Shown piece by piece: positions 12,191 to 64,000 of a stretch of 64,000 nt of DNA (its first letter is position 1; every line of letters begins with the position of its first letter). A model generated the notes under the pieces. It saw only the letters and a program-made list of their open reading frames with translations. It searched no databases and was not told where the DNA came from. The translations under genes were made by a program, and so were the position numbers. Origin of the DNA: Lepidodermella squamata (lineage: Eukaryota > Animalia > Gastrotricha). The DNA lies in assembly GCA_047495785.1 (NCBI GenBank), contig JBLDXI010000003.1, positions 620,001 to 684,000 of the forward strand, written 5' to 3'.

Positions 12191-12231
12191 GGAATTTCCA
12201 TTTTTAAGCAAAAGTTGAGCCATCAACCTAC

Positions 12232-13672: not shown

Positions 13673-14104
13673 GACGGGAAACGGTTTGTGCGAGCGTTTT
13701 AACCGCGCGTTAGGTGTCATGCTTTCCATCCATGCGAAGAAGAATCGCTCGAGTTGGGATCGCCATCTTGGTCTGGTTATGGGCGCGCATCGCAGTGCCG
13801 AGCACGAATCTACGCAGGTGTCTCTTTGCCAGGCTAACTTTGGCTAACGTCATCTCGCGTTTTCGCTTGCTCCCCCTTCGTCTGATGAATCTGTTATTGC
13901 TGATCCGACACCTGAGGCGGTCGAGAAGCGTACCGAGAAATTCTGGGTTTCTGCTACTACCCGCTGCCTACAAAAAACGTCGGAAGTAGCTGTTTGACCT
14001 GACAGCGCGTATTCGGTTGTTGAACGTTGGTGACAAGGTTCGTTTGGCAACGTTTGTGCGGCAGGGCTAGTTTTCGCCGCGTTATCGTGGACCTTTTGAT
14101 ATCG
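13673..14104 (+). mobile_element. Gypsy-type LTR retrotransposon integrase fragment, interrupted by a gag-like scrap
   Basis: GNGLCERFNRALGVML..WDRHLGLVMGAHRSAEHEST..FG, then VGDKVRL...PRYRGPF (GPY/F module). The insert at 13860-13990 is paralogous to 50755-50890. Confidence 0.8.
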
Positions 14105-15989
14105 CTGCCTAGTGGTAGTGATTCAACTGGCCTCTGGGAGTCCTCCTCAGTCGGTGTCAGTCACCGAAATTTGACCGCGGTTCGATGTTCAGGAAAAACC
14201 AGGTCGTTACACTGAACCTTGGAATTGTTCATCATCCACTCTGGACGAAATCCTGGAAAAGCATTGGGCTCGATGGCGAAATGAAGCAAGGCCTAAACCA
14301 AAAAAATTTGGTTTTACAGTAATGCGGAAATCGACGCACACTGAGTTCGCTGAGATTGAGTTGCATGACTACGACAGCGGCGATTTCCGTAGACACGTCG
14401 AGAAACATTGCATCAAGACGTACGAGTTGGACAAGAGCACGGAGGAGCTGAAAAAAGCTGTCGATGATTATTATGCAAATTTGAAGGTATTTCTTCAGTT
14501 GGAGCTGCTTTCATTTTATATTTCGTTTGCTTTTATTTATGTGAAGACTTCTGGTCGATCTGATACGGATCTGATACTGAGTCGATCATGAGTGATACGT
14601 CGACAATTTCGGTGTCAGTAGTCTCGGTTGTTTCCGTGTCGTCGGCAACGACCTCGACAACGTCCGTCGCCTCTTCCATTACCATCAACTTTCTGGCTCG
14701 GTTAATCCGGAGATACTCAAGTTTTTCAGATTCATTTCGATTTATTTCGCCCACTAAGCGGTAGCAAAGAAGGCTAAGCATTCTGTCTTGGAAAGGTTGA
14801 TATCTTCCGCCACTGCGATTGAGACAGACTGGTTGTTGCTAAACGCGGTCTAAGCTTTGCTAATCGTAAATTGCATTTAACAAAAACGAGCACCTCCGAC
14901 TCAGAACATTCCGAAAACAGGTAGACGGCAAAGCGTCCGAGGAGGGCACTCATCGTCGATTGCTAGAATAGTTGTCCCGCTTTACTTCCCAAATGAAGCA
15001 TGCTAGACCACTTGATTGCTGATTATCAAATCATCTGCCATTTTCGAAAGTTAGTTAATTTCTTCTTAATGAGCTTTAATAGTGAAACAGAGTGAAACAG
15101 ACCGTTTTCCAATAATTTCATGGCTGATTCATCAAATTTACGTTATTTAGGCGAGTAGCACGGAATTTCGAGCGGCATTTCTCATCGGCTGGCCATGAAG
15201 TTTCTGATGATCGCAGCAGCTTAGCGGCCGATTCCGCTGGAGCCTGCGTCGTTCTCAGGGAGGCGTTTGTGAACAAACTGTGGCCAGCGCCACTCGCTAC
15301 AGAGGTGATAACTGGCTAATTATGAAATTGACCGATTTTGATTGATGAAGAGTTTCATGAGAAGAGGACATTGTGACCGATAAAGATGCCATTGCTTGAT
15401 TAATGTTGTTTCTTTTCATTGGGATTTAAACCGGTAAAACAACGGTAAACCGGCGTCGATTCACCGGTTTCCTACCGGCTTGGGTTGCTGGTGGGTGACC
15501 AAGGCTTGGTTTTGGGTCGCGATTTTCCGACCTTTTTCCACCTCTGAGGTTATGGACACACCGGTGCTGGATAGTTCTGGAGCAAAATTCAATTCTCAAG
15601 TTTCTAAAGAAGGCCAAAATGGAATCAAGGACTCTCAGGGTTCAAGAAGTGGACTCGACTAAATTGAATTACTCGACCTGCTCATACGTGTAGAAACCAG
15701 AGAACGATGTGCAGAGACCTCGATGAAGCATGGTGTAATTGAGACTAAAACCGTGCGATGCGTTACCGAGCCTCATCGAATGTTTCGAGGATGCTGAGTG
15801 GGTGTTTTGTTCTAGAGCCCTGCACAGAGCCCGAAATTCGAGTCGAGTACGTAAGAATTTTTGGCTACCGTGTCGAGACGAGTCAGCCTTATGGCGATAC
15901 TTGGCCGTACTCGGCCGTCTCGAATCACGTGTTTTTTCTTGTGAGACGCTATTAAGCTTTGCAAAGAAGTGGTAGCACACGTTAAACAC

Positions 15990-16262
15990 ACTGACACGCA
16001 ACACCAGCTGAAAACAACTTTCAAGCAGGAAGTACCAATTAGGTGGTGGTCTCTTATAGCGCTTTTGCGGTCGATTGCGGCGAATAAAGAGGAATTACAG
16101 GAATGAGCGAGCGAGTATGTGGAAGATTTGGATTTCGACTCCATTACCAGCGTAATCCCGATTCTGGAGGTGCTTGAACGAGCGGGCACACTCCTGTCAT
16201 CTGTTAAGTGGACCACAATACCCCTCGTTGCAGCGCAAATTGAAATCATCAAGGAGTTGCTC
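15990..16262 (+). mobile_element. hAT transposase fragment
   Basis: LKTTFKQEVPIRWWSLIALLRSI...LEVLERAGTLLSSVKWTTIP resembles the hAT LKQ.V.TRWNS...E.AT..LS....T motif; internal stop. Confidence 0.7.
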
Positions 16263-18170
16263 TCGCCTGTACTTATCTGTTTACTTTTCAGATCGAAGAC
16301 ACAACGGTGCTGAAATGATGTTATCTAATTGAACCGCTCGCTAGCTATTTGCAGCTCTGTTGTTAATTGGTTGAACATGCCAAGCGGACGGACGTGAACA
16401 AAATACTTGAAGATGATCCGGTGCCCGGTGCTGCAACATCGCTTCAAAGTGTGAAAACATGGCTCTACAACAAAACATGCTTGATCCCCTTTCCTATTCT
16501 CGGAAGGCGGCGTGATTACTGCACTGCCGAAAGTGCCCCGTTTGTGCCAAGTATAAAGCATTGAACGTACCTTTAGTATCCATCCGCCCGGTGGATGAGC
16601 CTTTCGCCCTCGTCGATGGATATGGTCAGCACCGTCGAAACGCTTTCAGACAGCTTTTGCCCCACCGGTTGCTGAAAGCACTCTAAAATTGCATTTCATG
16701 TCGACCGTTTAGAGCTGCATACGGATCCCTATGATATCAGGTGCTATCTAAAACGAGAAAAATTTAAATTGAGTAAATCATCAGAAATGAAAAAGGAATC
16801 AATTTTGGATTTTTAAATAGCAAAATGAGTCCTCGGCAAAGCTACTCATTTTTCGCCTCCCGAGACATTCGCCCGTTGTGGACACGCCTCAGCAAACCTC
16901 AGTACCGCCTGCTGCACTGGTAAAACAGGAGTGAACTCAAACCTGAACAAGATGACTCTGATGACTCTGACATGAACACTATTTTGATACTTATATTTGA
17001 GATGATATTGCTCATACTTGCTCATACAAATATGAAATATGTACTTTCTCAAAACCAGCTCATATTTTGCTTCTACCAATTTCATCTTCCTTCGTCCTTA
17101 GATTTCGTCTGGTTATTCCGACGACGACGAATTAAATTCGACGCCGCGCGCCACTTCTTCCGGCGAAGCCACACCGCGCGGAACGCTGAACATTGGCGGC
17201 ATTACTCGTTACGCCATCGGCGAGGCGGAAATGTCAGATAATTTCAAACTGAAGCAAGGAAGTGTTAAGAATTTTTGCGCCTCCGCTCTTCAAGACTACG
17301 CGAAATCCAAGATTTTGGCAATCGTTAACATGAACTCCGAATAATTCAAAAGTTTAAGGGTGCTCCGACAGAAATCGTACAGGAGACAGAATTCACGATC
17401 ATTTGTCGGTAAGATACAATTTCTAATTATTTTATGATCAGGCAGAACGTTTGCAATTTAGCCTTGACCGTTCGAACGAAAGCTCAACCATCGCCATCAT
17501 TGTCTTGAAGGATTCAACGAGTGCTAGCATCATGTACTTTTGGCAGGAAATGACACCTGGGTCACTTATCAACCTGGCCCATCCGATCCCAAACGGCTTT
17601 TGAAAGAATACCAGGTCCTTCCGCGTTGACATGCTTGTCCCGAAGGTGGGTGGCCCGATGAAACGCAACGCTTTCCTGATTGACGGAGTCATTCCTTTGG
17701 ACGCCTGGCAAGGATTCCACCTTCACGTGGAGAAGTTAAACGTCGTTCGTGTGATGTATGCAGCCGAATCCTGTAGCAAACCCGCCTTCGACGGTCGCTG
17801 GGGAATTTCGTGTCACTGCTACCAGAAACGGCCCCCGGAGGTGATCAAGAATCTTATTGCTATCGACTTTTCGTCGAAGGAATTCGGAGGGCTGGCGACC
17901 GAGACGTTCGCCTCAAAGTCGTTGGCCCTGCAACTGCTACCTGCTGCTGTTGTTCACGATTACGAAGAAAAAAATGTCGAAAAAAATCGGCGCCCACTGC
18001 AAGGAGCCACGCAGCCATCGAGGAGGACGTATCGGCTTCGTCCTATTGTTTACAAAATATCTGCTGAAGTGTCGTCTATTTCGTCACCTAGAGATGCTTA
18101 TCAGCTCTGCCTACTTCGTTTCCTATTTCGGTAGCTGATGTGAGAAAATTTTCAGCGGTAACAATAAAAA

Positions 18171-18758: not shown

Positions 18759-20354
18759 TGCTTTGAATAATTTTTAATTTAATTTAATTTTTAAGCTCAG
18801 CTGAAATCAGGTACTTGGGCATGTATGTATTTTTGATACTTGATTTACCCCATGCTTCAATATCAGTGTGCCATACTATTTCAAACCAAATCTATATTAA
18901 TATGTCGCTACACCAAAAGAGCAATTTCTTTCAATCACTAGTACGTATTGTTCAGGCTCTTAATTGCCAGATATCATCTACCTGCGAGCTTCCCCGAACA
19001 CTATGATATAAGTCGTTGATCGTAGTCGTTATCCATTAAATCTACCTCGGTGATCATTATTATTATTAATTTTGTCAGTGCTTTCTACATATGCATGATT
19101 GCTCAATTGAACACTTTCTTTCTTTTTTCTACATATTCTCGGGAGTTTTGCTATATCTTTCATAACTGATTTACATGTTAAGGGGTGCTCGAATTCGAAG
19201 CTTTCCTACATATCTATGTGTCCCTAGTTTGCTCTATTGAGCCATTATTGAGCCACTGGTAATAAATGATTGCATATTCATCTGATTCTTCACGATTTTG
19301 GAAAACGAGCGACTGGCTGATTCAGTTGAAAGCTCATATTAACTATCCTTGCGTTTTTACAGCCAATTTGTCAACCTGTCCGGTTCCATCAGGTAACACA
19401 AATATTATTTTTCATGATAGATAATTTATTCTTATTTCAGAGAAAGGTGAGTTATCACGCGTCACAGGTGGTGGTGAATAATTCAAGTGTTCCATAACAT
19501 AACAGCAACTTTCCTATCATTAATTCTTACCTAACAATAACCCAGTACAAACATATTAAACTCAACTAACTTCGCTTTTTCACATTTCCTCTAGCACTCA
19601 ATACTCAACCAACCCGGCGCGTCTGAATGAGTCACACACAGAGACTTATCTGCGAGTTGCGAGAATTGGGCAAGCAACTTCTGCTATAAGGTATAAGCTC
19701 CTGCTACTGATAAGTTGCGATGGCCTCTTTGGAAATTTGAATTATTTGAATTCAGTAGAGCATCGGAAATTTCCGTTAAGGACACCTTGAATCTGATTTT
19801 TAGCTCAGTTAACTTGTTCCCTCGATTTAGACCGGAATTTGCTGTACGCTTGTACGTATAAGCTAGGCAAATTCAGATTCAGTGCGCGAATGTGATAACG
19901 AAGCAAAAAGAAACATCCGTAAAATTTACAACAGTTTTGTACATTTATCGCCGGTCCAGATGAAATTACAAACCTGAATCACATCATTGATATTATCGAG
20001 CGACGAAGACAAATCGAAGTCGCCGAGCTTGATTCGCTGAAGGTTGGCGCGGTCGTCGTAACGCGAACGCGTCCGGCTCAGGCATTTCCATTCGGCCGAC
20101 TAGAGCTACGTTATACGCTTCTCCCGATAACACAGCGTCTTATCTAAAATGAGGAAATGTACAGAAAATAACTGGAAATGAAGCGGGAATATATTTGAAT
20201 CCTCGAATATTGGCAAATCAATCCCCTTAATGAAATTGTTTCAAAATGGAATCCACTGTCACCGGGCATATCGGCTTTCGTCTTTGGAATTCGAAATTAC
20301 GAGGCGGCCAATGTATTTTCTGCAGGCGAGACCTGCATTTGGCTCGACTCGGGG

Positions 20355-20452: not shown

Positions 20453-20604
20453 AGAAGTTGTTTTGTTTCGATACCGCGCATGAAGGAAATCATAGCTCTC
20501 CGCCGAATTTTCAGCAAACACATTTTAAGAAGGTTAATTTTATAAATTTTTACAAAAATTAATGTATTAAAATTAAAATGCCGCGTGCGGGCTATATTTC
20601 AACT

Positions 20605-20840
20605 TCGAGACTTGAAGCTATAACTTGCGATATCGAAACTGACGTTCTCCCGGTTCTGCGAAGGTTGTTTCCTGGCGTGGAAATTAAGGGCTGTCTTCTT
20701 CATTACTGCCAATCCCAATCCATACTTAGTTGGCTGAAGGCGAATGGCTCCCAGGTCGAATACGGCGGAAAAGGTGGTTTGCTGAAATTGATTCGCAGGT
20801 TTATGGCATTGGCGCTGCTTCCACTTCGTCATGTTATACC
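20605..20840 (+). mobile_element. MULE/Mutator transposase fragment
   Basis: ITCDIETDVLPVLRRLFPGVEIKGCLLHYCQS...RRFMALALLP matches D.E...FP......C.FH..Q...ALA.LP. Confidence 0.85.
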
Positions 20841-20968
20841 AACAGCCCCGAAGCTCCGACGTTACAATGCGTTAACCAGTGGGTAATTCTAATCCACGTC
20901 AGTACTTCAACTCGTTCATTTTCTCTAATATTTTCCTTTTCCTAGCTAACTTAATTTGAAAGAAACAA

Positions 20969-22300: not shown

Positions 22301-24759
22301 ATTTGCGGATGCAGGAAGCTCAGCCCTGCTCGCTGCTAGCAATGCTTCCCTTCGACGGGCAATGCGCCCAGCAACCTACTCAAACGAGCCGAATCTATCA
22401 TTTCGGATCTAGATCTAGAATTTATATGTGGAAGCTCGCTACCTGAATTCAGCGCGAGCTAGTCCAGCGGCAGCTATTGGTGAAGCGGTGGGAGCTAGTC
22501 GACTGTAGGCTAAAAAGCGAGTATGCCAACCACGAATTCTTCGCGAAGCCGTGCGTGCAAGACGCGGCATATGGGTACTCGCTCGCACTATTCCCTTTTA
22601 CATTTCCACTATGCGAATGATAAACGATGGTAATTACTCGATTGTTAGTAATTACCAGCACAGTTACCAGCTCGTCCTGTATGAATGCTCCATTAATGCG
22701 TGCGAGTCAAGAATGAAAAAAGTCAAGATTGAAGCTACCGAGTGAAAAAGTGCTCAATGATAGCAAAAATCTATTGCGCCGCCAAAATAGCACTGCATTC
22801 GCAACAAGCTCACAGCCTCACAGTCGCCCTTGCTACATTGATGTCTCAGTATGCCATGAAATGATGCACCGCACGTGAATATAGACCGCAAACATCTCTA
22901 AATGATATTATTGTGAAAATCGCGGTCTAATAAGCGTTTTTCAGATGCGGTCAATGCTACACACTGCATTCAACAAGGCCGAAAATTTCACGCTTATTTG
23001 GAACAATAAAAATTTCAATAGGTTCAATAAGTAATTTGCACATGGTGGTCCAAATGAAATTAAAAAATTCACTAACCTGAATCACATGACTGACATAATC
23101 GGAGAGGGACAACACCGAATTCGTTGTCTCAGGCTTCGTTACGCGAGCGCATCCGACTCAGGCAATTCTATTCGGCCGATTGGAGCTGGATGAATTCCCG
23201 ATATCATAGTGATATGGCGTCTCATCTAAAATGAGAAAATGAGAGTAAATAAGCGGAAAAAGCGGGAATTATTTTGAATCTCGAATAGCAGCAAAATTAA
23301 TCGCCTTATGACTTTTTTCAAAATAAAATACGCTCTAATCATGAAATCCATTGTCACAGGACATGCCGGGTTTAATTTTTCGGAAGCTACGGTAGTTAAC
23401 ATAAGTGAGGTTTGATCGACAAATGCGGTTTCTCAGCTGTTCAATTTGTTTGCCATTTCACTGCGAGAATGAAAATGAAGCGGCGTTCAAAATTCTGCGA
23501 AAATATGCTCGTCAAATAATAATTGCTTCCTCTACATTTACCTTTGTTAAACGTTTTCAAATGAGAACAAGGTTCCCTCTCCAGCTGATCTGGGCTGTTG
23601 AATGTGTGGAAAGTTCATCGGTCAGGACAAGGCCGAAGATCGTTGTTATCCCCTGATGGCGGCGATGGCGATGCCACCGATTGCGACGATTACAACCTCA
23701 CTAATGCGAACGACTGGTCGCAAGTCGCGGTGGCTGTTGCCTGTTGCCCGTATTTTTTTCGCTGAAGACCTCGGAAATAATTTCCTATTTCAATTACAAT
23801 GCGCGGACGACCGTCCACCGTTCCCGAAATAGTACCGATCCACAAACATGTTTCGTTGAAATAGGCTGAACATTCCGCTGATGCTTATCGAAGGCGCTGA
23901 GGCTACTCTCTAACCGCCGGAGACGAGATGGCATCATGCGTCAGACGAATGCGAACGATAAACTTGGAACCACCTTTAATCTCTCGCAAAACCGGAGCTG
24001 GATAAATAAGTGAACACGAACTACTCCGATCTGGATAAGGTAGATGCCGAATATGATTTCTTCAGCGAATCAAACGAACTATTAGCCTTAGAGGTCGATG
24101 ACGACGTCTTTGACATTTCATTTCATTGATTCAAATCAATAACTCAAATCTGAAATGGTCTGGCCATTGAAATTTCGCGTCGCAATGTTTATACATACTT
24201 GTTACCTCTCTGTTCTAGAAAACTGCCTGATCCTTTTAGTTAGCTATCCATCTCATCATCTTAATTGCTGTCATCCTTTACGTCAGACATGGTACAACAG
24301 TGATACGGTCACATCTGCATCAGATACGGTCAAATTCTTTGTCTAATCGGCACCTGGAGGCAATCTTACTGGCCCGCCTCAGATCTCGGCACCGGCATCT
24401 GTAGGCGATCAGAACCAGGCACCTGAATCTGAAGACAACATCAATGTCGTTCTGACAACATTCTCAACGACGTTGAGAATGTTATTCCGCTAATAGCTGC
24501 TCCTCCCCAGGTTAGTCCAAAAATTATTCAACTACGACGTCGACGACATTGCTAATTATTTCATATTTTGCAGGCAGTTCCCGACCTGATTGCCGGCGCT
24601 GTTGATCTACCACTGGATATCGACCAGGACATGGAATTAATATTACACATGGATTAATCTTGTTAAGTCTTTTGTTCGCTCGTGCTCTTTCACTGAAGCT
24701 ATACTGTTTTCACTTTCAAGTTGTACCATAATTTTGTCGATGCTAAATTTTCAGATCTA

Positions 24760-26959: not shown

Positions 26960-27490
26960 ATTTTTACACTAGGACGCAGCAAGCAGGCGAATCGATCGAA
27001 GCATACGCTTCGGCCCTTCGTTTGCTTGCGGCGCGCCTCGGGGTAGAAGTCGACACCCTAATAAACACCTTTTACGAAGGCCTGACGATAAAGTCCGCCT
27101 GGCGCTCAAAACAGCCACAAAGCCCACGTTTGACTGTACAGTAGCCCTGTATTGTCAGCCTATAGGGAATGAAGCAAAATGAAAAATATCATTTGCCCTA
27201 TATTTCAGATATCAAGGACTCAAAGACGGCTTCAGAAAAAGCTTTCGACGGCGTAATTGCCCGCCTCGTCAATCTCGAGCGAGCAGACAAGGCCGCATCC
27301 AGCGCTATTGGCAACCTTGGCGCAACTGTCAGTGGCAATGCTAACAGCGGGCAAGCGGCTCCGGCCAGAAGCGGCGACGCTTCGGCTCAACCTAGCAGGC
27401 CATGTGTATCTGGTGCCACTGCACCGACCACAAATCAATCGCCTGTCGGCACGCCAAGGAGTGCGACTGCTGCGGCCGCAAAAACCACAG
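26960..27490 (+). mobile_element. LTR retrotransposon gag fragment with two zinc knuckles
   Basis: RTQQAGESIEAYASALRLLAARL...FYEGL (gag Q..GES...Y motif) and CIWCHCTDHKSIAC..CDCCGRKNH; frameshifted. Confidence 0.8.
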
Positions 27491-27549
27491 TCCGCGACGG
27501 GTTCGACATCTCTCCGTTTTCACCTCGACATTCGACCTCGACACCGGCG

Positions 27550-35562: not shown

Positions 35563-35699
35563 AGTATACCAGCTGTATACTTTACATTTCTACGTCGGAT
35601 GTTTTCAAGTATCACAAGGATCACAAGGTCAAGCTATCTTGCGAAGGGTAAATACTGGAATTTCAGTAAATTAATCAATTAAGCTTCATCCAACTTATC

Positions 35700-50910: not shown

Positions 50911-52848
50911 GCCCTTATACATCACTGTTTGAATCTTTTACTAACTTTCAATTCAAACCTCTACTAAAACATTCTATCACTATGAACTGAGTTGTTTCAT
51001 GTTACGTTGTCAAGCAATAAACCAGTATTGAGCCAATCAGTTGTCTTTTACTTTTTCGACACGTACTACAAATAGTTAAGCATATATAATTCTTCCGCAG
51101 TGAAACAGAGACCGTTTTCCAATAACTTCACGGCTGATTTGAAATGCGTTATTCAGGCGATTGTTGCGGGTTCCGAGCAGCATTTCTCATCGGCTAGCCA
51201 TGTATTTTCCGCTGATCACAGCAGCTAATCGGCGGTTCCGTTGACGCTTGCATCGTTCTCAGGGAGGGGTTTGTGAAGAGTTTCATGAGAAGAGGACATT
51301 TTGACCGATAAAGATTGCTAAGGATTTTGTACTTGGGAAGCCGGTCGGGATGGGTCGCGATTTTTCGACCTGTTCCCACCTCTGAGGTGCTGCATTAGTG
51401 CGCTTATCGCTAATGGATATTCTTGGCAACTTCATGCAGCGCAGAATGACGCAAACGCACACATCAAATGGAACCGTATGATGGAAGATTTACGCCCGTG
51501 GACCAAAGCATAGTAAATGACTTTTTACATCACGGCGAGCCGGTGGCATCGGGTGTCTACAAACAGTTTATGGCGCCAATGTGAGATTTCAAATGCACTA
51601 CCTATTTTGTTTGAAAAGAGAAGGGCGTAGAAAAGATAGTTCAACTGCTTTCCGCTAACTTGCCAGCAACCAGCAACATCTTAAATCCAGGGGGTAGCTG
51701 TGTGATATGTTTCGAGGCGCTTTAGCGCATTGCGCTACATGACTCGCTATTCAGACTAACATGCGCATTCATATAGCGCATCAATACACACCGCCGTTGT
51801 TATCATCAGCTCGGCCAGTGTTATAGGATGACAATACTCGAAATTTGTCGAGCAGCTGTACTCAAGGTTGGTCACAAAGTGCCTCGAAATTCAATCATGC
51901 CCCTCAGCACCAGGTCTCGACTCTAAACACAAGCTTCTTCGCTCCCTGATGGACGAGACACGAGACTGTAGAGTGAGCTATGTGACAGTTGCTCATGGCG
52001 ATAATGCTTCTTTGACTGTACCGACAAACGGCGAAACGGACGACGGGCCTACGCCATAAAAAATCCGAGAGATGAATCTTCCCCCCACTGATTTAGTATC
52101 TGATTCAGAATCCGGATCACTCAACTCCTTGGCTCAAAACGCACCTCAAGGCGCCAGGAAGAAAAATCGGAAGAGTAATGGCGCTAGTAAAACGGACGAA
52201 GAGATGGCCAAAGTGGCAGTTTTCGGCTGATAATGCCAACTCCTTTGATTGTCTGATGTGTGACTTTAATGAATTGTTCTGCATGCTAACCGCCTGTCAT
52301 CGGAATAGCATCGGCAGCTCCGGGATCGAAGATCGCACACTGTCAGCATGCCTACTTATTTTCTAATATTTATGTTATGCATCTGAAATTTTTGCTACGT
52401 ATCAAAAGACTGCTATTATGCGCAATAAATGAATGCATGAGTATCATTTAAAATGTTAGGCTTGGGAAATAATTGAAATTATCGATTGAAAACAACTGAA
52501 AAATGCATTTAAATAATTGAAAAAACTCCCGGAAACTATCGTTTCTTGAGCACGAACCCAGGCTCATTCAAAACCTCCAGGCCAATGTTCTAGACCTTTG
52601 ACGATTTGATAACATCCGGTAAGGTTCGATAACTAGTTGTATTAAAAAATAACCTGAATCACACCACAGATCTCCGAGCTAAAGCTGGAGGCAACATCGA
52701 AGTCTTCGAGCTGGAACCGTTAGGTGGGCGCGTCCCCTTTCAACCTTGTTAGCCTTGGCAGAGGCCACCTGCGACCAAAACCGGTTTGCTCATCGTCGCG
52801 TCGTTCCCAGAGAACATTGGAATATGACGATTACGACTCATCTCAAAA

Positions 52849-53245
52849 AATGAAGGAGCTGGCGGCTTCAATGAAACATGCCCATTTTTCTCTATTCTAC
52901 ACTTTTACGGCTAACGAAAGTGGATCCCCTGGGCTAAGACCATTTGTTAACCGACTCAAAATAGCCGGCCAATTACGAGTACCCCCGATCCTCCGCCGCC
53001 ACTTTACTATACTTTGAACCAGCGCCAAGTAAACGCACTCACTCTGGATCCTGTTCTGTATCCGAAAATTTACGAGGCCAATTTTTACATTATAAATATG
53101 GTCTGGCAGCGAACGGTCCACCATGTCGTCAGATTTGTTGAGAAAAGCCCTTCTGAGATATTAGGAAAGGTCTATACTCACTTCGCGAGAATTGAGTTCC
53201 AAAGTCAGGGGAGTCTTGGAAATAAGGCACATTGCCACGGTGGCG
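52849..53245 (+). mobile_element. Helitron Rep (HUH) domain fragment
   Basis: SLFYTFTAN (motif 1) ... DPVL ... FARIEFQSQGSLGNKAHCH (EFQ.RG..H.H motif 2). Confidence 0.75.
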
Positions 53246-54327
53246 TGTCAATCTCTCACAATGAAGGCGTTAACAACATATATTTTTGAAATCGGGGGAT
53301 CGAAATCCGAGGCATGCCAGTATTCTTTATTCGGAAAATCCAGAGATTCCATCATCAAAAGAGTGAACTAGCGAAAAGAAAAGTTCATGCTATTTCGTTT
53401 TGACACTTTGGTATATTGGGCATACAATGATGCAAATTTTGCCATCGCCTGAACTCGGTGACTAGTCAACCGAAGACGATCGGCCAGAACTGCAGCGGGA
53501 CTAACTACTAACTCGTTTATTATCAATCATCAAGAATACAGAGTACATGGGAAAATGAAACCCGAAAACAATGGTCTCCGAATTTTCCGACTTAAAGGAC
53601 GCGGTTATGGCTATTGGCCGTAGGAAGAAGTGTGAAAAGTCTAGGCAAGAAGCGAATCCCCTAGTGGGAGCAAAAACGCTACAAAGAAGTGTGAGAAGTC
53701 AATCGCCATCAATTTTAAAAGCCGAAACAAAAGATGACGCAAGACTGACTGTGCAGACTCAGCTGACGATTTTCCATTCATTTAAATTCGAGATTTATTG
53801 TGTTTCTTGTTGTTGATGCTTTCAATCAATCAGATCGTCAATTTCTGGAGCTGCCTGCCTGCGAGGCAATTGCCGCACAAAAAGTTGTACCAGGTGACAT
53901 CTGCCTTGGATTTAGCAAATTCATCATTGAAAGTATCCTTAATACGGTTCACCAGCCTGGTATTGTCTCACCAAGTCGTCCGAGCTACATCTGTTCGGCT
54001 TCCAGGCCCATGGCTTGAAAGCCTTCGGTCCTCGGATGCTGAAGAAGAACTTCCCAGCATGGCACTCACGAGACTGCATTAGTGCCCCGGCTAAGCCCTG
54101 CCGCTACATCCCTGATTTTTCCCTAAAAACTAACATATGAGCTTGAGGCTTTCTGTATTCCTTTAAGTGTCCTTGCGATCCTCGCCCTCCTGAGCCCCTC
54201 CCCAGTCACCCAGTAAGCCGATCGTATATTAATTGAGACCTTCCTCTGTCCTGGAAGTCCTCTGTGTATGAGTATGCACAATTCAATGAAATTTAATCCT
54301 TACTCAGATTCGATTACGTCAATCAAA

Positions 54328-54828: not shown

Positions 54829-55639
54829 TTAACTATGTATGAATGAATGTCAAAGTATACCTGCGACAGAAGGGCAGTATTCTCCCGGTCATAAAAATCG
54901 ATCCACTACCAGCTTGAGTAATGTTTGCCTGGCTAGAGGTCATTTCGATCACTGAAAGATGGTCGAACGACTGCTGATTCGCAACCTGCTGGTTCCCCAG
55001 CCATACAGCACCGTCAGGCAGCACTCAGCACTCGGTTGGTGATATATTACCACATTTTTTGAAGCTGCTGGTTGCGCACCATCTGGCCTCGGCGAAGGCG
55101 TCGCTGCCCCAATCCATCTAAAATATGAAAATGTAAATATAATAAATCAACGAAAATTTAAAGATAATCAATTTTGGAATTTCAAATAGATAAATGAGTC
55201 CTAAGATTGGAATTCCTTTTGAATCCTGTAATTTCAATCCCCGACAACTTCAGTCTTGGTCGAAATATGTAAGAAGTCGCCGATTTCTCGAACCATAAGT
55301 TCTCGAGGCGACCGACTATATGATTAGTTGCAAAAATCCACAACTCATCGCTTAATTCATTTCTGGTTTGAATAACTTCAGCTAACAGTGCGTTTACAAG
55401 TTGCTTTTCATCATCTACGACCTTTTCGACAGCCAGCACATCGCATTGCCGTGAGATTTTCCGATATGCTATCGAGTCTGTCCACAGATGAGTCACTTGA
55501 AAAGGCCACACATTTTAATGTGTTTTTCTAGCAAGAAAGCAAAATCCTGTCAGAGAACCTGAAGGCTGACTGAACTTCGCGAGGCGCAAGCGCAGCTCAA
55601 CACCGTTTATGTTTCGTCCTATAGATAACCCAAGTTACA

Positions 55640-55726: not shown

Positions 55727-58348
55727 TTGTCTATTAATTTTGTAGATGTAGACACTGAGACGAACGCCTTTGCATTTTTACCGCTCGTTAAGTTTAGAAA
55801 GAAGTCAATTTTAATCCCTAGCCCTGAAAACCTTTCTGTTCATTTAGGTGTCTATTGGACTCCCTCGGCCAAGTACCATCAGGTATCCTTTTCAATTCGA
55901 CTTTGTTTAGAAGAATTTTCTATTAATCTCTTAAAAGAGCGATCTTTTTTGATAGTCGAACCAAATCAATTCGACCAATAAAACAACGGAAGGTCAAGAA
56001 AGTAACGTTACTTGTGGTCAACAGCCCAAGCGAGGTGGCACGCAAGGCAATGTTCGTCCACTACGCGACATTCCTCCAAGTTCTCAAACATCTATCATCT
56101 CAAGCGAGGGTCTGGCACATATAGAGCTACAATGAACAAATATGCTCCGTTTCGCTCTTGTAGGATTTATGTCATCATTTGAGCTCAGCGAGCTTGTTGT
56201 CACACCACCTTCGACCGCCGACAAAACCTGCTTGTCCTGCACAAGGCATGCCGGTTGACCCAAGTATCTGCTGCTGCTGTTGCCGCTCGGTTCGGGGAAT
56301 GTTACGGATGATCGGGCTGTGGCTGGCGACGGTGATCGTCGGCTCGGTGTTGTCATCACTGATGATGAGCTTATTGCGGAGATTTTCCTCGGGATCCAGT
56401 CGTCCATGTTGGACAGGCGGAAAGTACGCTGAGATATTGATACGGTGAACAACTGCTGCGAAATTCGATTGATCAGTTCGAAGATTTAATTATCGCTGGG
56501 AACTATTTGAAAGATGTACAATTATTCTGCACTACACGTCATCCGATTACGAAAGAGGGTTTTCGGAAACCAATCGACATCAAACATCAAACGGATGACC
56601 GCAATCGGCTTAAAGTTCATCCTTGTATTTGTATGTTTTCGTAGATTTCTATGACCTAGTTTTGTGTAGCTTCGTCTTGTCCCTTGTCCAATGACAGGAC
56701 GCAACTTGGTGCGATTCCAATGGGAAACATTACAATGGGAATGCTTTGCGCCTTCAAATTCTCACTTTCTACGCTGGTTCTTTGTCGAGCGCGAGAAAAT
56801 TATTGTCAATCAAGAGTGACAATAGAGGTTGTAAGCTTATTATCTGTACACTTGGACCGCTCGTGACGACTAGGACCTCGCCCAGCTCGACGATTGTCAA
56901 ATATATTATCACGATCAAGCCTTCGCATCGGGCTCCCGTTCGCGGCAAAATGGCCGTGCTGATCAACGCTGCTCCAGCTATTAGCCTCGTCGGCACCTCT
57001 ACCTCAAGGTTAGCTTAAACAAATTTGGCATAATATTCGAAATATTTTTCGATGTTACAGCGATATCAGTGCAAACTAAAATAAGAAAACGTAAAGAGTA
57101 TTAAATCAACGTCTGTGAAAATAAAATAACTCAAGGTGATTTCTGAGTCCCTTGTGAGTAAACAGAGTGGCCATTTGTCTGGCATTCTGATTTCTAGGTA
57201 AGACGAACGCCATCAACGATCGACGAACAGCTTCGACGCTAAACACAGATGCGCCAATACTATTCATAACTGACGGCCTCATTTCGGTCGGAGCCGGCCA
57301 GAAAATAACCTACAGAACTGACGCGACATCGCAAATACATTTGAACCCCGCCACGCCCTCGTTAACCTACCTGCGCACCCGCACCACCTAACGAACTACT
57401 TATCGAACTTTTGTATTACAGTGTTTGGTCGTGCTCATCTGCCGGCTATTCCACGTCAATGCCTGGAAGGTTTGCCAGCTCTCGCCGCAACATTCCCGAG
57501 AAACCTGAAAATCAGGCTGAACAGCCCAAGCCGTTTTCCGAGATGAAAGCCACCAAACACAAAAATCGAAAGAAAGGTATGTCTTTCGAAATTCCTTTCG
57601 AAATTCGGAATAGCTAATTCCAATTTATTCAATTTTCCATATGAACTTATCATAAATATGAACTTATTATATGAACTTTCATGAACTTTTTTCGAAATCG
57701 AAAGGCTCCAATCGTAAAACAAGTCGCGTCAACTTCCAACAACACAATCCTGACTCATCAGTCGATTTATCAGCCAATATCTCGGGAATTGAACCCATTG
57801 CCAGGTCCTCTCCCAACCCGATTACAGGTTTGAATATCATAGTTTTTATTGAAATCGTATTCTTCAACTATCCACTTGCCATGCAGACCTATTCGATAAT
57901 TCGGTCTTGGCAATGCGAAGATCCAAGAAAAGGAAAGTGTTCATCGATTCGTCGCTCATCCCGATGACCCCGCGCACGCCGCCGCTGCTACCGCTGCTAC
58001 AGCCGAACTCGAGACTGCCCGCGCTGCCTCAATCGCTGCTCGAGATGCCCTGGGCATTGCGATCGACGCCGCCTTTCGCTCTAGGCGAACACGCCGAAAA
58101 CGTCGGTTAGCCGATTTGATTCTAGTCCGATCAACGCGATCAACGCGACCGCTGGGATTGGGCCAGCTCGAGGCTATCCGCGCCAGTTCCAAGCACGCCA
58201 GCAACCGCGACATCCCGGTCGTCAAGACTCAGGAAATCGGCCTGCGTCCGCTCAAGGCGGCGCTCACAACGACCCACCGTGTCCTCTTCCCCAGCGCCAG
58301 AATCACACTGCTTCGCAGTGCAACTAGGCGAAAGCTGAGAGCAGATCG

Positions 58349-58396: not shown

Positions 58397-58599
58397 ACCA
58401 GTCACCGATGGTCAAGGCGAGGAACGGGTGCTCCAGGCACGTAATGCCAGAAACGACTGCGCGGACGAAGAGGGGCGACGAACGGAACAAACTAGAATTG
58501 TTGGAATGTGGTCTTGGTTGGGCTCTTTGAAGTACTGCGCTATACCGACTTCAAAGGTAAGCACTTCACACCAAACTACCAGTCTTTAAAATGTAAAAT

Positions 58600-58820
58600 T
58601 TGCAGGTTCTCGTAGTTACAAATAGATTGACCAAACGTATGGGAGTGCTATCGAAAGTCCAACAAGGCGAGGCAAACGCAGCCCCTGATGAAATCATTCA
58701 AACTTTGCTCGAAGACTTGCCGAAACTGGTTGAAAAATACCGCCCGCGGCGTCGTGTAAACATGGACGAAATGGCGCTGTTTTACGAACAAATGCCGCGT
58801 CGCTCGTATGTTCTAGGCGA
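58600..58820 (+). mobile_element. Tigger/pogo transposase fragment
   Basis: QGEANAA...LPKLVEKYRPRRRVNMDEMALFYEQMPRRS (Y....I.N.DETGLF....P..T). Confidence 0.85.
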
Positions 58821-59139
58821 CGGCTCAATATTTCGCTTACCCTCCGGTAAATCAATTGACCTCGATGCTGGCTTCACTAATACTGTGCTGCACAATCTAT
58901 ACAAACGTTTTCTGACTGTTTATGATCTGGATTTTACCTCTGTAACAGAGAGACCAGAGTGACACTACGCCCCCAATTGTAAAACTGTTTATGATAGGTT
59001 GACTAATAAAGTGTGAGAGATAGGCGTTCTCTTCTTTACATGTGAAGGCTTTCGTCTCTGTACCGATCAACATCCTAATTAATAAGCTAGAAGAAATTAA
59101 TGTGTGCGGTAACCTTTTAAATTGACTCAGAAGCTATCT

Positions 59140-59400
59140 TTGTGGTAGGAGCTTCAAGGTTCTTGTCAACAATGCTGTCTCAAGCGAATTTAAAATTCCG
59201 TCCGGAGTCCCTCAAGGCTCAGTCCTTGGGCCACTACTTTTTGTTATTTTCATGTTATTCGTCGACGAGTGCATTGTTAATTCTGTGACGAAGTACTTCG
59301 CTGATGACACCAAAATATTCAAGCGAGTCCGTTGTGTGCAAGACTGTGTTCAACTTCAAACCGATCTCGACAACATTGTTAAATGGTTTCCTGACAATCA
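59140..59400 (+). mobile_element. CR1/L2-like LINE reverse transcriptase core fragment
   Basis: SGVPQGSVLGPLLFVIF...KYFADDTKIF...LQTDLDNIVKW. Confidence 0.9.
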
Positions 59401-59913
59401 ATAGTAATAAATGTTTTACGTCTTAATGGAAGAAAATCTACGGACGTTGCAAATTTCACACAAATTAATCGCCGATTTATTAATTTGTGGAATAGCCTAC
59501 CATATGATGTTGTAGCTGGTTCAATTAATAATTGCGAGACATAAAATCGAATTCCGGAACTTTACCAGCTTTTAGAGTTATTCGCTTTAACGCAATTTTC
59601 GCCTACGCGCAACTTTTCCTTGTAGCCACTGAAATTGCGCTATAGCGGGGGCTGACTGTATATGGTATACGGAGTTGGCTCTCACAACCAAACCATGTCG
59701 ACTGAGAAATTCCCGCCGTACTTAGATGCCATTATTATTCTGACTTCTCGCGTGTATCTCAAAATGTCTGTAGTCAAGCGCGAGAAAATTATGATCAATC
59801 ACGTCTGTAATAACGCTCTTCTACGTGCAACTCTCGCCGTTTTCACCACTTAAAATCGTGCTCTCATCTTTGGGATTTATGCACTTAATCAATTAATAAA
59901 TAAAATAGGATGT

Positions 59914-60456: not shown

Positions 60457-61843
60457 TTACGTCATTTTGTCCCACAAATAGTCTGCCATTTCCAGTTTAC
60501 CCTCCATAGCAGCATAATCCACCGCCGTTAGGCCAGAATGGTTCCGCATTCTCAGAAGACTAGGCTTTTTGCCTACGAAAAAATCCAACGTTTCTCGGAT
60601 TTCCTCCGACCAATCAAAAAGATCAGGCGCAATGAGATGCAGTATGTTGTCGCCAGATTTGCTCATAACAGACACGTCAGCACCATGTTTCACCAAAATC
60701 TTCGCACAATCAACAGATTCGAGGCAGTACAAAATAGGATGTTCGAGTTTAACATCTGCCTTGAACTCCTCAATCAGCACCCTGGCAGCCTTAGCTTGAT
60801 TCCGGATACATGCGCTACATAAAGGAGTCAGCAAACTTTTTTGACCGGGTTTATTCAACAAATCTGGGCAGTGCTTCAACACAAGCCGCAATGCTTCTAT
60901 ATGATCATCATAGCACAACTTGTGCACGATTGTGTCTTCAGTTTCGCCGTATAGATTCGTCAATTTTGCGCCTTTTCCGCAAAGCGAACTTTGGGTCGAG
61001 CGAATGGCCTTCCGCGCCTTTTCAGATATTCAGCAATTTTCAACCGATTTTTCAGTAAAGCATACACAACAGGACTTCTATAGTTGCCACATCCCAGTTC
61101 GATATCAGCACCACATCGTTCCACGAGACATTTAACGAGTTCGAGGGCTTCCTCTTCCGTTTTCGCATGATGATCCGGGTCAATCAGTGAAAACAGAGGC
61201 GTTTCGGCATAGTCATCAAGGTTGACGTATTGCGGGCGCAGTTTCGCGATGGTTTCCAGAAGCTCCGGGGTACCTTCAGTGAGGGCCGCATAAAGAATAC
61301 TTTCATTTTTATGTCAATATCACCACCAGCTGCGCGGAGATACTCGAAAACAGCTTGGTGCCCTTCAAGCGCAGCAAGCAAAACGGCATTATTATCAGCA
61401 TCGTTCACGTAATTGACACCCATTTTCACGGTCAATCAGATGTTTTATAACCTCCAGGTTGCCCTTTGATGCAATGAGGCTGGGTAAATTGTTGCCGAGA
61501 GAATGACATTTTTCATTCACAAGGTTAGGGTCAATTTCCAGGAAAAACTTGACCATTTCAACTGAGTGGCTGTGATGTATAGCCATAGCGTTATTTTCGT
61601 CGCGGTGGTAAATGTTGGCGCCTTGCTCTTCGACTACATAGCGAGCAACTTCGACGGCTGATGGCGATCGGCTCGTAGCAACTGTCATCAGCAGACATTC
61701 GTGAGGTTCGTTGTAAGGATGATCGTAATTGGCTAGGTATCGCCGACAAGCTTTGGTGAGCATAGGGCGCTCGAAAATTTGCTTGATCTTTTCCAGTCGG
61801 CCGTACAAGCTGCGTTGCCGAGGACAGCAATATCGCGAATCAT
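60457..61843 (-). pseudogene. Ankyrin-repeat gene with frameshifts, paralog of the ankyrin part of 8941-10743
   Basis: Ankyrin motifs are split over ORFs 61395..61808, 61184..61435 and 60457..60963 in different frames. KQIFERPMLTKACRRYLANY aligns with RRLFARKQLSRSAKIFLANH, and RVLIEEFKADVKLEHPILYC with RCLIEEFGADPNFHSPILDC. Confidence 0.75.
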
Positions 61844-62637
61844 CTAAATTTTGGGAAATTAATCATATTAATGATAGAAATTAAAGATAGAAATATTCAA
61901 AATGTCATTAAATACGCATTTTTTTGATAAATAATAATATTGTTATTTTCGTATGAAATTATTGTTCTTCCTTATGGACGTTGAACATTGATCAAGTTTG
62001 CGTATTCCACCGACACAGCGTAAATTTTGACCGTGCGGGGGATTTTGGCGAAGGATCAAATCACGCTGAAAGATCTGGATGAATCGGAATGAGGCGAACG
62101 GAAGAAAGGCGACCTATAATGAGCAGGTGGAACGTTGGGTCGAGCGAATGGAGGAGATTCTTCGTCTTTATTGTCGTGATATCAATATCTCAGTCAGCAA
62201 CAGCGCAGATATGCGGCAATTTTTTACCGGCGTTCAACTCCAAACGGTAGCAAACTTGGAACTTGGCCGAAGGACACCTACCACGTCCTTATGTGCATCA
62301 GCGTCGGCGTGTTTGTTTGATAAGCCGGCGCTGATGCACGTAAGAGTTGGTGTTTACATCGATTATGTACAACAGCCGATTTAGCGGCGAACTGTACGGT
62401 CATAAAGATACAACCAAGAAGCGAAAGGTTGCAACTTTGCAGAAATTGGGTAGAGAAGCTCGGATTGAACAAATCGAGCAGCTTTTGGATAACAACGAAA
62501 TGGATCGAATAATGCAAATCAATGACCGATTTCCCGTGATGGAGTGCACTCGATATCACAGCATTATTAGCATTCTTTCGTTTCTCCGGTATTATTCAAC
62601 GGAAGAAGGGAGAATTTAATTTCATCTGTGACTATGA

Positions 62638-62760
62638 AATTCCCGTCGTCCTCCTAACAGATCGTGGGACCAATGTGGACTCGGTCCTAATTCGAGATTT
62701 CTGTGCTTATCTGGGTATCCAGAAAATCCGCACTGGGCGTTTTTCGCCAACCGGCAACCG
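62638..62760 (+). mobile_element. Gypsy-type integrase core fragment
   Basis: IPVVLLTDRGTNVDSVLIRDFCAYLGIQKIRTGRFSPTGN. Confidence 0.85.
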
Positions 62761-63224
62761 CAGCGACATGCTCAAATCTTCCCCAACGTCGCCAAAGGAA
62801 ATAAAAGTCGAAGAAAACAGGAGCGCTGAAGCTGAATACACTCTCGTTTTTCGGTATTGTGATGCTTCCGAAATTGAAGTGGATTTGAACATGGAATGGG
62901 AACAGAGCGTTTTATAGTGACGTGATCTTACCTACCTACACCACTTTTCCCCGTACGTTTCGACATTCTACCTGTGAACGGGACCCTTAGCCTTGAGTCT
63001 TGGGCAATGTTCCATGTCAGTTACATCAGTTGCTTCCGTTTCGCGCCCCCGGATCACCCCACTGCCGGTCTGGCGCCGAAAAAATTAGTTGTGAAATGAA
63101 CACCCTTTTCTAAGGGCATACTGTTGCTTTGTATTGAAACTATTGACCCGAGGATATAGAAATAACATACTTCAGGCCGAGGTTCCGTCTCGGACTTCAA
63201 TTCAACTGTGACAAGCGACTTGAG

Positions 63225-63406
63225 AAGCGACTTGGGCGAGCCTTGAACCTTTGAGCTTTGAGCCAGAACCCTGAGGCCTGAAATTCAAGTAACGTTTGTT
63301 GATTATGGCTAATTATTGTGCTTTATACACGACAGACATTTTGGCGAGCCTTGAACCTTTGAGCCTTTAAGCCTTTGAGCCCTTGAGTATTCAGCCTTGA
63401 GCCTTG
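63225..63406. repeat. Short degenerate tandem repeat (gagccttt/gagccttg)
   Basis: ttggcgagccttgaacctttgagc-like block twice plus 7-8-nt sub-repeats. Confidence 0.6.
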
Positions 63407-63883
63407 GTCATCCTATGAAGCCCTGGTGGCCTTCACCCTTCACGCCATGTAAGCCTTTTGCAAAATCCTCTGTTATTAATCCTTTGTCCCCTTCGAACCT
63501 CACACGTCGAGCTGCGCCTTGGCACCTTCCACTACCGTCATTCAGCCGAATGTCTACCGAGAAACGTATGGCAACTCGCGAAATCCCGCCGGTGAGCTGC
63601 GTTCGAATTTGGCATATTGGTTCGGTCTGTTGGACGGGTCGCATGGCAAGATAGGGAAGCTTTCTATTTCAATGATGACAGTAATGACAGTTTGACGAGG
63701 ATTATTTCCAATTAAAACCAATTTTATGTGAAAAACTCCTTTTTTCATTTATTCTCGCGAGGAGTGGGTTAAATTGTCACAGAAATGACGAATTTGATGT
63801 CTAAAATTTTGTCCGAAGACATTTACCATGTCTCATCGACACTGCTTCTTCTTATTCGCTAAGGCGCGCTGCTCAAAACTTGA

Positions 63884-64000
63884 CGAATTTAAAAGCTATG
63901 ACAGCGTCGATGACCCGGCCAAATCGACTATTTTCCCGCCGGAATTTCTAAACGCGTAAAGCCCGTCATTGCTGCCACCTCATCTTCTCCGACTCAAGTG
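63884..64000 (+). mobile_element. Helitron PIF1-like helicase fragment
   Basis: FKSYDSVDDPAKSTIFPPEFLNA*SPSLLPPHLLRLK (P.EFLN....G.PPH.L.LK). Confidence 0.85.

What the first reader, a model, noticed from the sequence alone, without database searches (positions are those of the whole stretch)
13673..64000. Complete strand bias of recognisable transposon coding fragments
All 22 TE protein motifs I recognised read on +: integrase x2, hAT, pogo, Tigger, MULE x2, piggyBac, P, CACTA-like, Helitron Rep and helicase, LINE x6, gag/BEL x4. The host genes and host-like exons all read on -. Independent insertions should be roughly 50:50, so this implies selection or a directional capture mechanism. The bias continues past the ankyrin pseudogene to the window end, so the locus probably extends further. 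Several of the 22 calls are short, low-confidence matches.
Basis: seen in the sequence. Interest (0 to 1): 0.8.

Follow-up and report, generated by a model that had tools for sequence, protein, structure and literature searches.

The report
Antisense transposon fragments inside spliced array
About 50 kb of this animal genome holds old fragments of at least eight kinds of jumping genes that all point opposite to a long, spliced, apparently non-coding transcript built from repeated small exons; this fits known orientation filtering, possibly a small-RNA defence locus, rather than a new capture mechanism.

Summary
A symmetric Pfam scan of every ORF of 50 aa or more in 13.7-64 kb found five transposon (TE) domains on + and none on -. 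Three more + calls are backed by ESM-Atlas neighbours (MULE, P/THAP9, pogo) and one by internal homology (a second Helitron Rep). Nine independent fragments at 9:0 give a two-sided p of 0.004.

The region is not a random graveyard. A repeat occurs 15 times, always in the same orientation, about every 3 kb. On the - strand its conserved core is a 3' splice site (ttttag|), and in eight copies also a donor (AG|gt). The splice signals are better conserved than the exon bodies, which have no open frame. Contigs of public run X1 join a paralogous first exon at 39.4 kb (donor GTAAGT) to the cassette at 33456, and that cassette to the next.

So the TE pieces are intronic and antisense to a - strand spliced transcript. 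The best reading is orientation filtering by that transcription. A piRNA or siRNA source remains possible, but no small-RNA data were available. First-reader notes, unchecked, report the same pattern at other loci of this genome.

The parts
8944..12538 (-). Intact host gene (RING finger plus ankyrin repeats). Exon 1 is ATG plus 22 codons at 12538-12473 with donor GTAAGT. RING exon ORF 11130-11687; ankyrin ORFs 10141-10743 and 8944-9798.
   Evidence: ORFs; ankyrin relatives; exon 1 and donor.
12864..12999 (-). Cassette copy U0: conserved intron end plus acceptor ttttag|, exon high end at 12906. Lies upstream of exon 1 of the intact gene.
   Evidence: nhmmer E 1.6e-18; acceptor.
13461..13844 (+). 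Integrase C-terminal-like fragment (..ERFNRALG..W..HL..). Read by eye only.
   Evidence: Translation. No Pfam or PDB support.
15128..15316 (+). hAT dimerisation-domain fragment (ERHFSSAG). A direct copy lies at 51099-51277.
   Evidence: Pfam Dimer_Tnp_hAT E 0.034; duplicate.
16691..16837 (-). Cassette copy U1 (type B), acceptor at 16747.
19974..20143 (-). Complete cassette exon U2, 170 nt, ttttag|...CAG|gtttgt, stops in all frames.
20563..20883 (+). MULE transposase fragment. The Cys-rich tail at 21536-21814 is probably part of the same element (read by eye).
   Evidence: Atlas: 31 of 40 neighbours are MULE, score 0.96.
23077..23225 (-). Complete cassette exon U3, 149 nt.
25984..26163 (-). Cassette copy U4 (type B), acceptor gttag| at 26066.
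26753..28010 (+). LTR-retrotransposon gag region (Retrotrans_gag at 26821-27141). Its flanks recur at the same offset in units U1 (18356-18792) and U2 (20913-21052).
   Evidence: Pfam 1.3e-5; duplicates.
29396..29554 (-). Complete cassette exon U5, 159 nt. Its start (29554..29540) matches, with 2 mismatches, the sequence that X1 joins to the U6 donor.
29971..30450 (+). P-element/THAP9-type transposase fragment.
   Evidence: Atlas TNP-like_GBD / RNaseH_C / THAP9_C, score 0.96, 207 shared features.
33293..33456 (-). Complete cassette exon U6, 164 nt. Both of its borders are junction points in X1 contigs.
34365..34895 (+). Second Helitron Rep-like fragment.
   Evidence: tblastn to 52951-53286, E 6e-4.
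35268..35564 (-). Remnant of a RING exon, paralog of 11574-11872.
   Evidence: blastn 84%; blastp 75% over 32 aa.
39396..40220 (-). Paralog of exon 1 (ATG at 39461, 22 codons, donor A|GTAAGT after 39396) and of the upstream block of the RING-ankyrin gene. In X1 it is spliced to cassette U6. Read through into U6, the frame stops after 25 codons.
42160..42319 (-). Complete cassette exon U9, 160 nt.
44959..45140 (-). Complete cassette exon U10, 182 nt.
47623..47779 (-). Complete cassette exon U11, 157 nt.
49207..49569 (+). LINE reverse-transcriptase N-terminal-like fragment. Read by eye only.
   Evidence: Translation. No support from Pfam, the word search or PDB.
49879..49979 (-). Cassette copy U12 (type B), acceptor at 49882.
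52641..52853 (-). Cassette copy U13. The donor CAG|gttatt is kept at 52654; no acceptor was found.
52951..53286 (+). Helitron Rep fragment (..ARIEFQSQG..HCHG).
   Evidence: Pfam Helitron_like_N 8.7e-4.
55113..55203 (-). Cassette copy U14 (type B), acceptor at 55117.
57045..57112 (-). Cassette copy U15 (type B), acceptor at 57075.
58597..58959 (+). pogo/Tigger-type DDE transposase fragment (..RVNMDEMALF..).
   Evidence: Atlas DDE_1 / HTH_Tnp_Tc5, score 0.92; motif.
59126..59401 (+). Reverse-transcriptase fragment (GVPQGSVLGPLLF .. FADD).
   Evidence: Pfam RVT_1 1.7e-7.
60460..61862 (-). Old ankyrin paralog or pseudogene, 33-36% identical to the intact gene's ankyrin ORFs.
   Evidence: Pfam Ank families; blastp.
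62540..62914 (+). Integrase core fragment. Weak call.
   Evidence: Pfam rve E 0.064, plus my own reading of the sequence.

Best explanation
The region from about 13 to 62 kb is an old tandem array with a period of about 3 kb, and it is transcribed on the - strand. Each unit keeps a conserved 3' splice site, and in eight units also a 5' splice site, that bounds a short exon with no reading frame.

At least one transcript starts at a decayed paralog of the neighbouring RING-ankyrin gene (exon 1 at 39.4 kb). It is spliced cassette to cassette and runs into a stop codon at once, so it is effectively non-coding.

The transposon remnants lie in the 3-6 kb introns, and all are antisense to this transcript. 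The most likely cause of the one-sided orientation is an orientation filter set by the - strand transcription. Insertions whose own terminators, polyadenylation signals and splice sites faced the same way as the host transcript were removed by selection. Only antisense ones survived long enough to decay in place.

What is shown: the bias, the array, the conserved splice signals and two splice junctions. What is inferred: that transcription covers the whole array, and that selection rather than insertion preference made the bias.
For: Bias: 5:0 by symmetric Pfam scan, and 9:0 with Atlas and internal homology, p=0.004.

Array: 15 F1 copies, all on +, none on -. Every dispersed repeat pair in the region is direct, 52:0 once the five local palindromes and two closely spaced inverted pairs are set aside. 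The spacing is far more regular than random: P(minimum spacing as large as observed) is 3e-5.

Splice signals: ttttag| or gttag| in 13 of 13 copies and AG|gt or TG|gt in 8 of 8. Pairwise identity is 0.83 at the donor and 0.67 at the acceptor, against 0.45-0.49 in the exon and 0.32-0.37 in the downstream intron.

Transcription: X1 contigs join 39396, which the genome follows with GTAAGT, to 33456, which is preceded by TTTTAG. They also join 33293 to a cassette start like 29554.

Antisense excess of TEs in introns is an established pattern (PMC3517506, PMC1794541, PMC3088655).
Against: In the well-studied mammalian cases known to me the intronic antisense excess is moderate, and DNA transposons show little of it. 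Here six of six DNA-transposon fragments are antisense. At 70% antisense, 9 of 9 has probability 0.04.

Polyadenylation hexamers are not depleted on the - strand: AATAAA occurs 38 times on + and 29 on -.

The host transcript appears non-coding, so it is unclear why its integrity would be under selection.

Only the stretch 29.4-39.5 kb has direct splice evidence, and it comes from one run whose RNA label is a guess and which also holds fold-back chimeras.
Confidence: 0.45

Rival explanations
1. The locus is a dedicated uni-strand small-RNA source, either flamenco-type piRNA or endo-siRNA. The - strand transcript is kept because it carries antisense copies of many transposon families. Orientation is positively selected because only antisense fragments yield guides against transposon mRNAs. 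The conserved splicing of otherwise meaningless exons serves export or licensing of the precursor, or release of the introns.
For: Fragments of eight or more superfamilies are all antisense to one transcript. The bias is complete, as in flamenco, rather than moderate. Splice sites are conserved more than the exons, the logic of a host gene whose payload is not in its exons. Flamenco precursors are spliced, capped and polyadenylated, and mosquito core clusters hold antisense viral fragments and are driven from neighbouring genes (10.1101/2022.08.22.504762). The EJC contributes to export of flamenco precursors (PMC5155165, title and abstract only). First-reader notes report the same pattern at six or more other loci of this genome (unchecked).
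Against: No small-RNA data could be examined. Every fragment is old: no ORF exceeds 239 aa and repeats are 63-85% identical over stretches of more than 100 nt. Notes from other windows describe young, intact transposons in this genome, yet this 50 kb has caught none of them, which is unlike an active trap. The fragments are intronic, so canonical splicing would remove them from the exported RNA.
Confidence: 0.3
2. The common orientation is mostly inherited. A unit that already held a few transposon pieces was amplified in tandem, so there were few independent insertions and the bias carries little information.
For: The period of about 3 kb and the all-direct repeats. The gag flanks sit at the same offset in units U1, U2 and U4. 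The hAT piece and its neighbours are collinear between units U0 and U12.
Against: The supported fragments belong to eight different superfamilies, sit in different units, and show no detectable similarity to one another, apart from the weak Helitron pair. Duplication can therefore account only for the gag and hAT copies, which were already collapsed in the 9:0 count.
Confidence: 0.12
3. The bias is chance or an artefact of detection. Weak calls on + were accepted while equally weak ones on - were never tested.
For: Only three Pfam hits are below E 1e-3. The Atlas was queried only for + candidates, and it can score 0.9 or more for a wrong frame over a real gene. ORFs of 100 aa or more are nearly as common on - (30) as on + (38).
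Against: The Pfam scan and the motif scan treated both strands identically and gave 5:0 and roughly 6:0. The repeat orientation test needs no annotation and gave 52:0 and 15:0. The largest - ORF has no relatives.
Confidence: 0.05

Closest known systems
flamenco-type uni-strand piRNA clusters (Drosophila) and mosquito core or read-through clusters
   Same: Tens of kb of truncated fragments from many transposon families, nearly all antisense to a single Pol II transcript. That transcript starts at or near a protein-coding-type promoter and is spliced (PMC10495008; 10.1101/2022.08.22.504762).
   Different: No small RNAs have been shown here and there are no young insertions. The fragments sit in introns between regularly spaced, repeated non-coding exons. 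I know of no flamenco-type cluster described with such a tandem exon array.
Antisense orientation bias of transposons inside gene introns (human, mouse)
   Same: Transposons inside a transcription unit survive preferentially when antisense. This is attributed to terminators and splice sites on their sense strand (PMC3517506, PMC1794541, PMC3088655).
   Different: The bias here is complete and includes DNA transposons. The host transcript seems non-coding. There is no depletion of AATAAA on the transcribed strand.
Tandem non-coding host-gene arrays for intronic small RNAs (SNHG14 with SNORD116/115, the C19MC microRNA cluster). Recalled from my own knowledge, not tested.
   Same: Repeated units of a short non-coding exon plus an intron. 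Splice sites are conserved while exon sequence drifts.
   Different: No conserved snoRNA or microRNA-like element was found in the introns: Rfam gave nothing and the cassette alignment has no covarying structure. The intron content differs from unit to unit and is transposon debris.

Membership tests
uni-strand (flamenco-type) piRNA cluster | Fragments of many transposon families in one orientation over tens of kb | tested here: met
   9:0 supported fragments from 8 superfamilies over 15-63 kb.
uni-strand (flamenco-type) piRNA cluster | Transcribed from one strand as a long precursor antisense to the transposons | tested here: inconclusive
   Splice junctions on the - strand between 39396|33456 and 33293|~29554 in X1 contigs. 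The rest of the array is inferred from conserved splice sites. The other strand was not excluded.
uni-strand (flamenco-type) piRNA cluster | Dense 24-32 nt small RNAs (1U bias) from that strand, bound by PIWI proteins | not testable with these tools
   No small-RNA or RNA run on record holds the region.
uni-strand (flamenco-type) piRNA cluster | Acts as a trap: contains recent insertions of currently active elements | tested here: not met
   The longest ORF is 239 aa. Repeat copies are 63-85% identical over stretches of more than 100 nt. There is no intact element in 50 kb.
intronic antisense orientation bias | The transposons lie within introns of a transcribed unit | tested here: met
   The P, Helitron-like and MULE-like fragments lie inside the two introns defined by X1 junctions (29555-33292 and 33457-39395). 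For the other fragments this is inferred from the flanking cassettes.
intronic antisense orientation bias | Signals that terminate transcripts are depleted on the transcribed strand | tested here: not met
   AATAAA occurs 38 times on + and 29 on -; with ATTAAA, 60 against 54.
small-RNA host-gene tandem array (SNHG14 / C19MC type) | Tandem units of a non-coding exon plus intron, with splice sites conserved more than the exon | tested here: met
   15 copies with a period of about 3 kb. Identity is 0.83 at the donor and 0.67 at the acceptor, against 0.45-0.49 in the exon.
small-RNA host-gene tandem array (SNHG14 / C19MC type) | A conserved snoRNA or microRNA gene in each intron | tested here: not met
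   No Rfam match in the window. Introns share only patchy blocks. The hairpins are not periodic.
dual-strand piRNA cluster / random transposon graveyard | Fragments in both orientations | tested here: not met
   0 fragments on -. 0 inverted dispersed repeats.

The most novel reading that the evidence does not exclude
An intron-distributed antisense transposon archive. In this reading a non-coding host gene made of repeated cassette exons is kept under selection for its splicing alone, and its introns each carry antisense pieces of different transposon families that feed a small-RNA (piRNA or siRNA) silencing pathway. If the unchecked first-reader notes on other RING/TRIM, TPR-ARM and similar arrays hold, this would be a recurrent genome-defence architecture of this lineage. 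It would differ from flamenco-type clusters in using introns and a tandem exon scaffold.
Probability: 0.2. Interest if true: 0.8.

Novelty: new variant of a known kind. Interest (0 to 1): 0.5.

Why it matters
If the bias reflects plain purifying selection, it is an unusually clean example in a compact animal genome of how transcription direction decides which transposon insertions survive, DNA transposons included. If the locus feeds small RNAs, it would show a cluster design not described so far: tandem non-coding exons with conserved splice sites and the payload in the introns. Because similar loci were noted elsewhere in the same genome, that question could be tested genome-wide with one small-RNA library. 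In either case the cassette-exon array is a real, previously unrecognised transcription unit, and any annotation of this region should include it.

Tried and rejected
- Pfam on the ten longest + ORFs found nothing, so ORF length is a poor guide to which ORFs are TE remnants. Pfam at E up to 10 on ten + ORFs I had picked by eye added nothing new.
- PDB sequence searches of four candidates were uninformative.
- Word searches for the RT-like ORF 49207-49569 and for the largest - ORF found no relatives. The host ankyrin ORF has only distant relatives, 35% identity or less, so this lineage is poorly represented and close TE relatives cannot be fetched.
- Rfam and tRNA scans found nothing, so the repeat is not a known SINE or structured RNA. 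RNAalifold found no covariation in the cassette.
- I looked at whether the repeat is a solo LTR or a Helitron end. It has no TG..CA ends, no clear terminal hairpin followed by CTRR, and both ends of its copies vary. I dropped that reading in favour of an exon cassette.
- Polyadenylation-signal asymmetry was not significant.
- ORF-count asymmetry between strands is weak.
- Expression evidence is limited to one small run. No run labelled RNA holds the region.
- I did not run the large representative protein search. One query could not settle a claim about two strands.

Full report
**Setting.** The window is animal DNA with about 45% G+C. Host genes read on the - strand. An EGF-repeat gene lies at 0.1-7 kb, and a RING-plus-ankyrin gene at 8.9-12.5 kb. 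An old ankyrin paralog, 33-36% identical, lies on - at 60460-61862. The finding concerns 13673-64000.

**Is the strand bias real?** I translated all six frames into stop-to-stop ORFs. I then scanned every ORF of 50 aa or more in the region against Pfam at E<=0.1, both strands alike: 241 ORFs on + and 203 on -.
- The + strand gave RVT_1 (1.7e-7), Retrotrans_gag (1.3e-5), Helitron_like_N (8.7e-4), Dimer_Tnp_hAT (0.034) and rve (0.064).
- The - strand gave only ankyrin families and scattered noise. The hits were located.

Pfam is not sensitive enough for such decayed pieces. The ten longest + ORFs gave nothing, and neither did several ORFs that carry clear transposase motifs when read by eye. For three of those, the ESM-Atlas neighbours belong to the expected families: MULE for 20563-20883, P/THAP9 for 29971-30450, and pogo DDE_1/HTH_Tnp_Tc5 for 58597-58959. 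The ORF at 34365-34895 matches the Helitron ORF at 52951-53286.

A symmetric six-frame search with 18 TE motif patterns matched the RT, hAT, Helitron and pogo fragments on +. The one hit on - lies inside the ankyrin pseudogene. Reading all - ORFs of 60 aa or more gave me no transposon candidate, and the largest one has no relatives.

This leaves nine independent supported fragments from eight superfamilies, all on +, two-sided p=0.004. Four more + calls rest on my own reading only. Some of its gag and hAT calls are copies of one another.

**An annotation-free test.** A sensitive self-comparison of the region gave 52 direct repeat pairs and seven inverted ones. Five of the inverted ones are local palindromes. 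The other two are closely spaced pairs, 122 bp and 1.5 kb apart, that look like the ends of single elements. No sequence family is present in both orientations.

**The region is a tandem array.** One family (F1) first appeared as six copies 65-76% identical. An iterated nhmmer profile finds 15 copies, with E from 1e-176 to 5e-7, all on +. At E up to 50 only two noise hits appear on -. Their anchors lie at 12.9, 16.7, 20.1, 23.2, 26.1, 29.6, 33.5, 42.3, 45.1, 47.8, 49.9, 52.8, 55.1 and 57.1 kb, with a weak one at 61.8 kb. The mean spacing is 3.4 kb and no spacing is below 1.96 kb. For randomly placed points that has probability 3e-5. Other blocks are collinear between units: U0 with U12, and the gag flanks in U1, U2 and U4. 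So an old unit of about 3 kb was amplified, and the units later diverged.

**What the repeat is.** Read on the - strand, the best-conserved block of F1 is a polypyrimidine tract ending in ttttag|. It is present in 13 of 13 copies, one of them as gttag|. In eight copies a block 149-182 nt downstream reads AG|gttt (once TG|gttt). Seven copies hold both signals. The exons they bound have stop codons in all three frames, and their lengths differ modulo 3.

Mean pairwise identity is 0.83 over donor positions +1 to +8 and 0.67 over the last 20 intron bases. It is 0.45-0.49 inside the exon and 0.32-0.37 in the downstream intron. Splice signals are therefore conserved more than the sequence they splice. 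This agrees with another first-reader note on this window (s1-422774). The repeat matches no Rfam family, contains no tRNA, and shows no covarying structure.

**Evidence that it is spliced.** No run labelled RNA holds the region. Run X1 (2015, labelled 'RNA?' as a guess) holds 21% of the sampled words of the host-gene stretch and 5% of 24-34 kb. Laid on 28001-34000, its short contigs break exactly at the predicted borders of cassette U6.
- At 33456 the contig continues with GGCAACCTATTATCA. That is an exact match to the - strand at 39410-39396, and the genome follows it with GTAAGT.
- At 33293 it continues with a sequence that matches only 29554-29540, the start of cassette U5, with two mismatches.
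- A third contig links U6 to 39457-39428.

Both junctions are canonical GT..AG on the - strand, so X1 holds spliced RNA-derived sequence. The same contigs also show strand-switch chimeras, which I take for library artefacts. The two mismatches may mean that a second haplotype or a close paralog is the source.

**Where the transcript starts.** The exon at 39.4 kb and a block at 40.0-40.2 kb are paralogs of exon 1 and of an upstream block of the intact RING-ankyrin gene. Exon 1 is an ATG plus 22 codons, MQxNCDLPPAxQSLDFNGxLLS, followed by donor GTAAGT. A remnant of the RING exon lies at 35268-35564. Read from that ATG into cassette U6, the frame stops after 25 codons. The transcript therefore looks like a non-coding RNA driven from a decayed gene copy.

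**Interpretation.** The transposon pieces are intronic and antisense to a - strand spliced transcript. This is shown for the pieces between 29.6 and 39.4 kb and inferred for the rest. I consider an orientation filter acting through that transcription the most likely cause (0.45). Antisense excess in introns is well documented (PMC3517506, PMC1794541, PMC3088655). Against it: the bias is complete and includes six DNA-transposon pieces; AATAAA is not depleted on the - strand; and the value of a non-coding host transcript is unexplained.

The main rival (0.30) is a flamenco-like small-RNA source. It accounts for the completeness of the bias, the diversity of families, and the conservation of splicing without conservation of exons. 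Flamenco precursors are themselves spliced, and mosquito clusters are driven from neighbouring genes (10.1101/2022.08.22.504762; PMC10495008; PMC5155165). Against it: no small-RNA data exist for the locus, every fragment is old, and the fragments are in introns.

Inheritance of orientation through unit duplication explains only the gag and hAT copies (0.12). Chance or detection bias is unlikely, given the symmetric scans and the repeat test (0.05).

**Relation to earlier notes.** First-reader notes on other pieces of this genome describe the same picture, large array introns filled with antisense transposon fragments. None showed a follow-up and I could not check them. They raise the possibility that this is a genome-wide feature, which the proposed genome-wide count would settle.

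Noticed in passing
window 54326-54830: A 505-bp perfect-centre palindrome whose arms are about 75% complementary. It would fold into a long hairpin on either strand. It could be a fold-back element or a hairpin-RNA source. It lies inside the array between cassettes U13 and U14.
   Followed up: no
window 59913-60075, 24758-24877, 50641-50711: Smaller local palindromes (65-73% identity). They are the only other inverted repeats in the region.
   Followed up: no
window 37289-37362 and 38861-38936: An inverted pair 1.5 kb apart, 76% identical. Possibly the terminal inverted repeats of a decayed DNA transposon.
   Followed up: no
window 31430-32365: X1 contigs also cover short pieces here, some with 4-5 differences and several strand-switch joints about 100 nt apart. 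The stretch has long ORFs on both strands (31681-32136 -, 32181-32633 -, 32253-32687 +) with no Pfam match, and a 16-nt tandem repeat at 31784-31852. It may be a further exon, a separate transcript or a repeat.
   Followed up: partly
window 12864-12999 and 61790-61848: Partial cassette copies lie just upstream of exon 1 of the intact RING-ankyrin gene and at the 5' edge of the ankyrin pseudogene. The cassette may therefore have been part of the ancestral gene unit, for example as a 5' leader exon.
   Followed up: partly
window 16328-16645 and 49644-49898 (- strand): Cassettes U1 and U12 share a different exon body, with 59% amino-acid identity over 46 residues in a - frame (KRFDGADHIHRRGRKAHPPGGW..). 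The cassettes fall into two subtypes, A and B, that share only the intron end and the acceptor.
   Followed up: partly
window 1107-1391: In-frame 12/36/96-nt tandem repeat inside the EGF-repeat gene. It encodes (GSS)n on the - strand.
   Followed up: no
window 28001-34000 (run X2): The DNA run that holds the window also gives contigs 90-95% alike with small indels over much of the stretch. That suggests a second haplotype or a close paralogous copy of the array.
   Followed up: no
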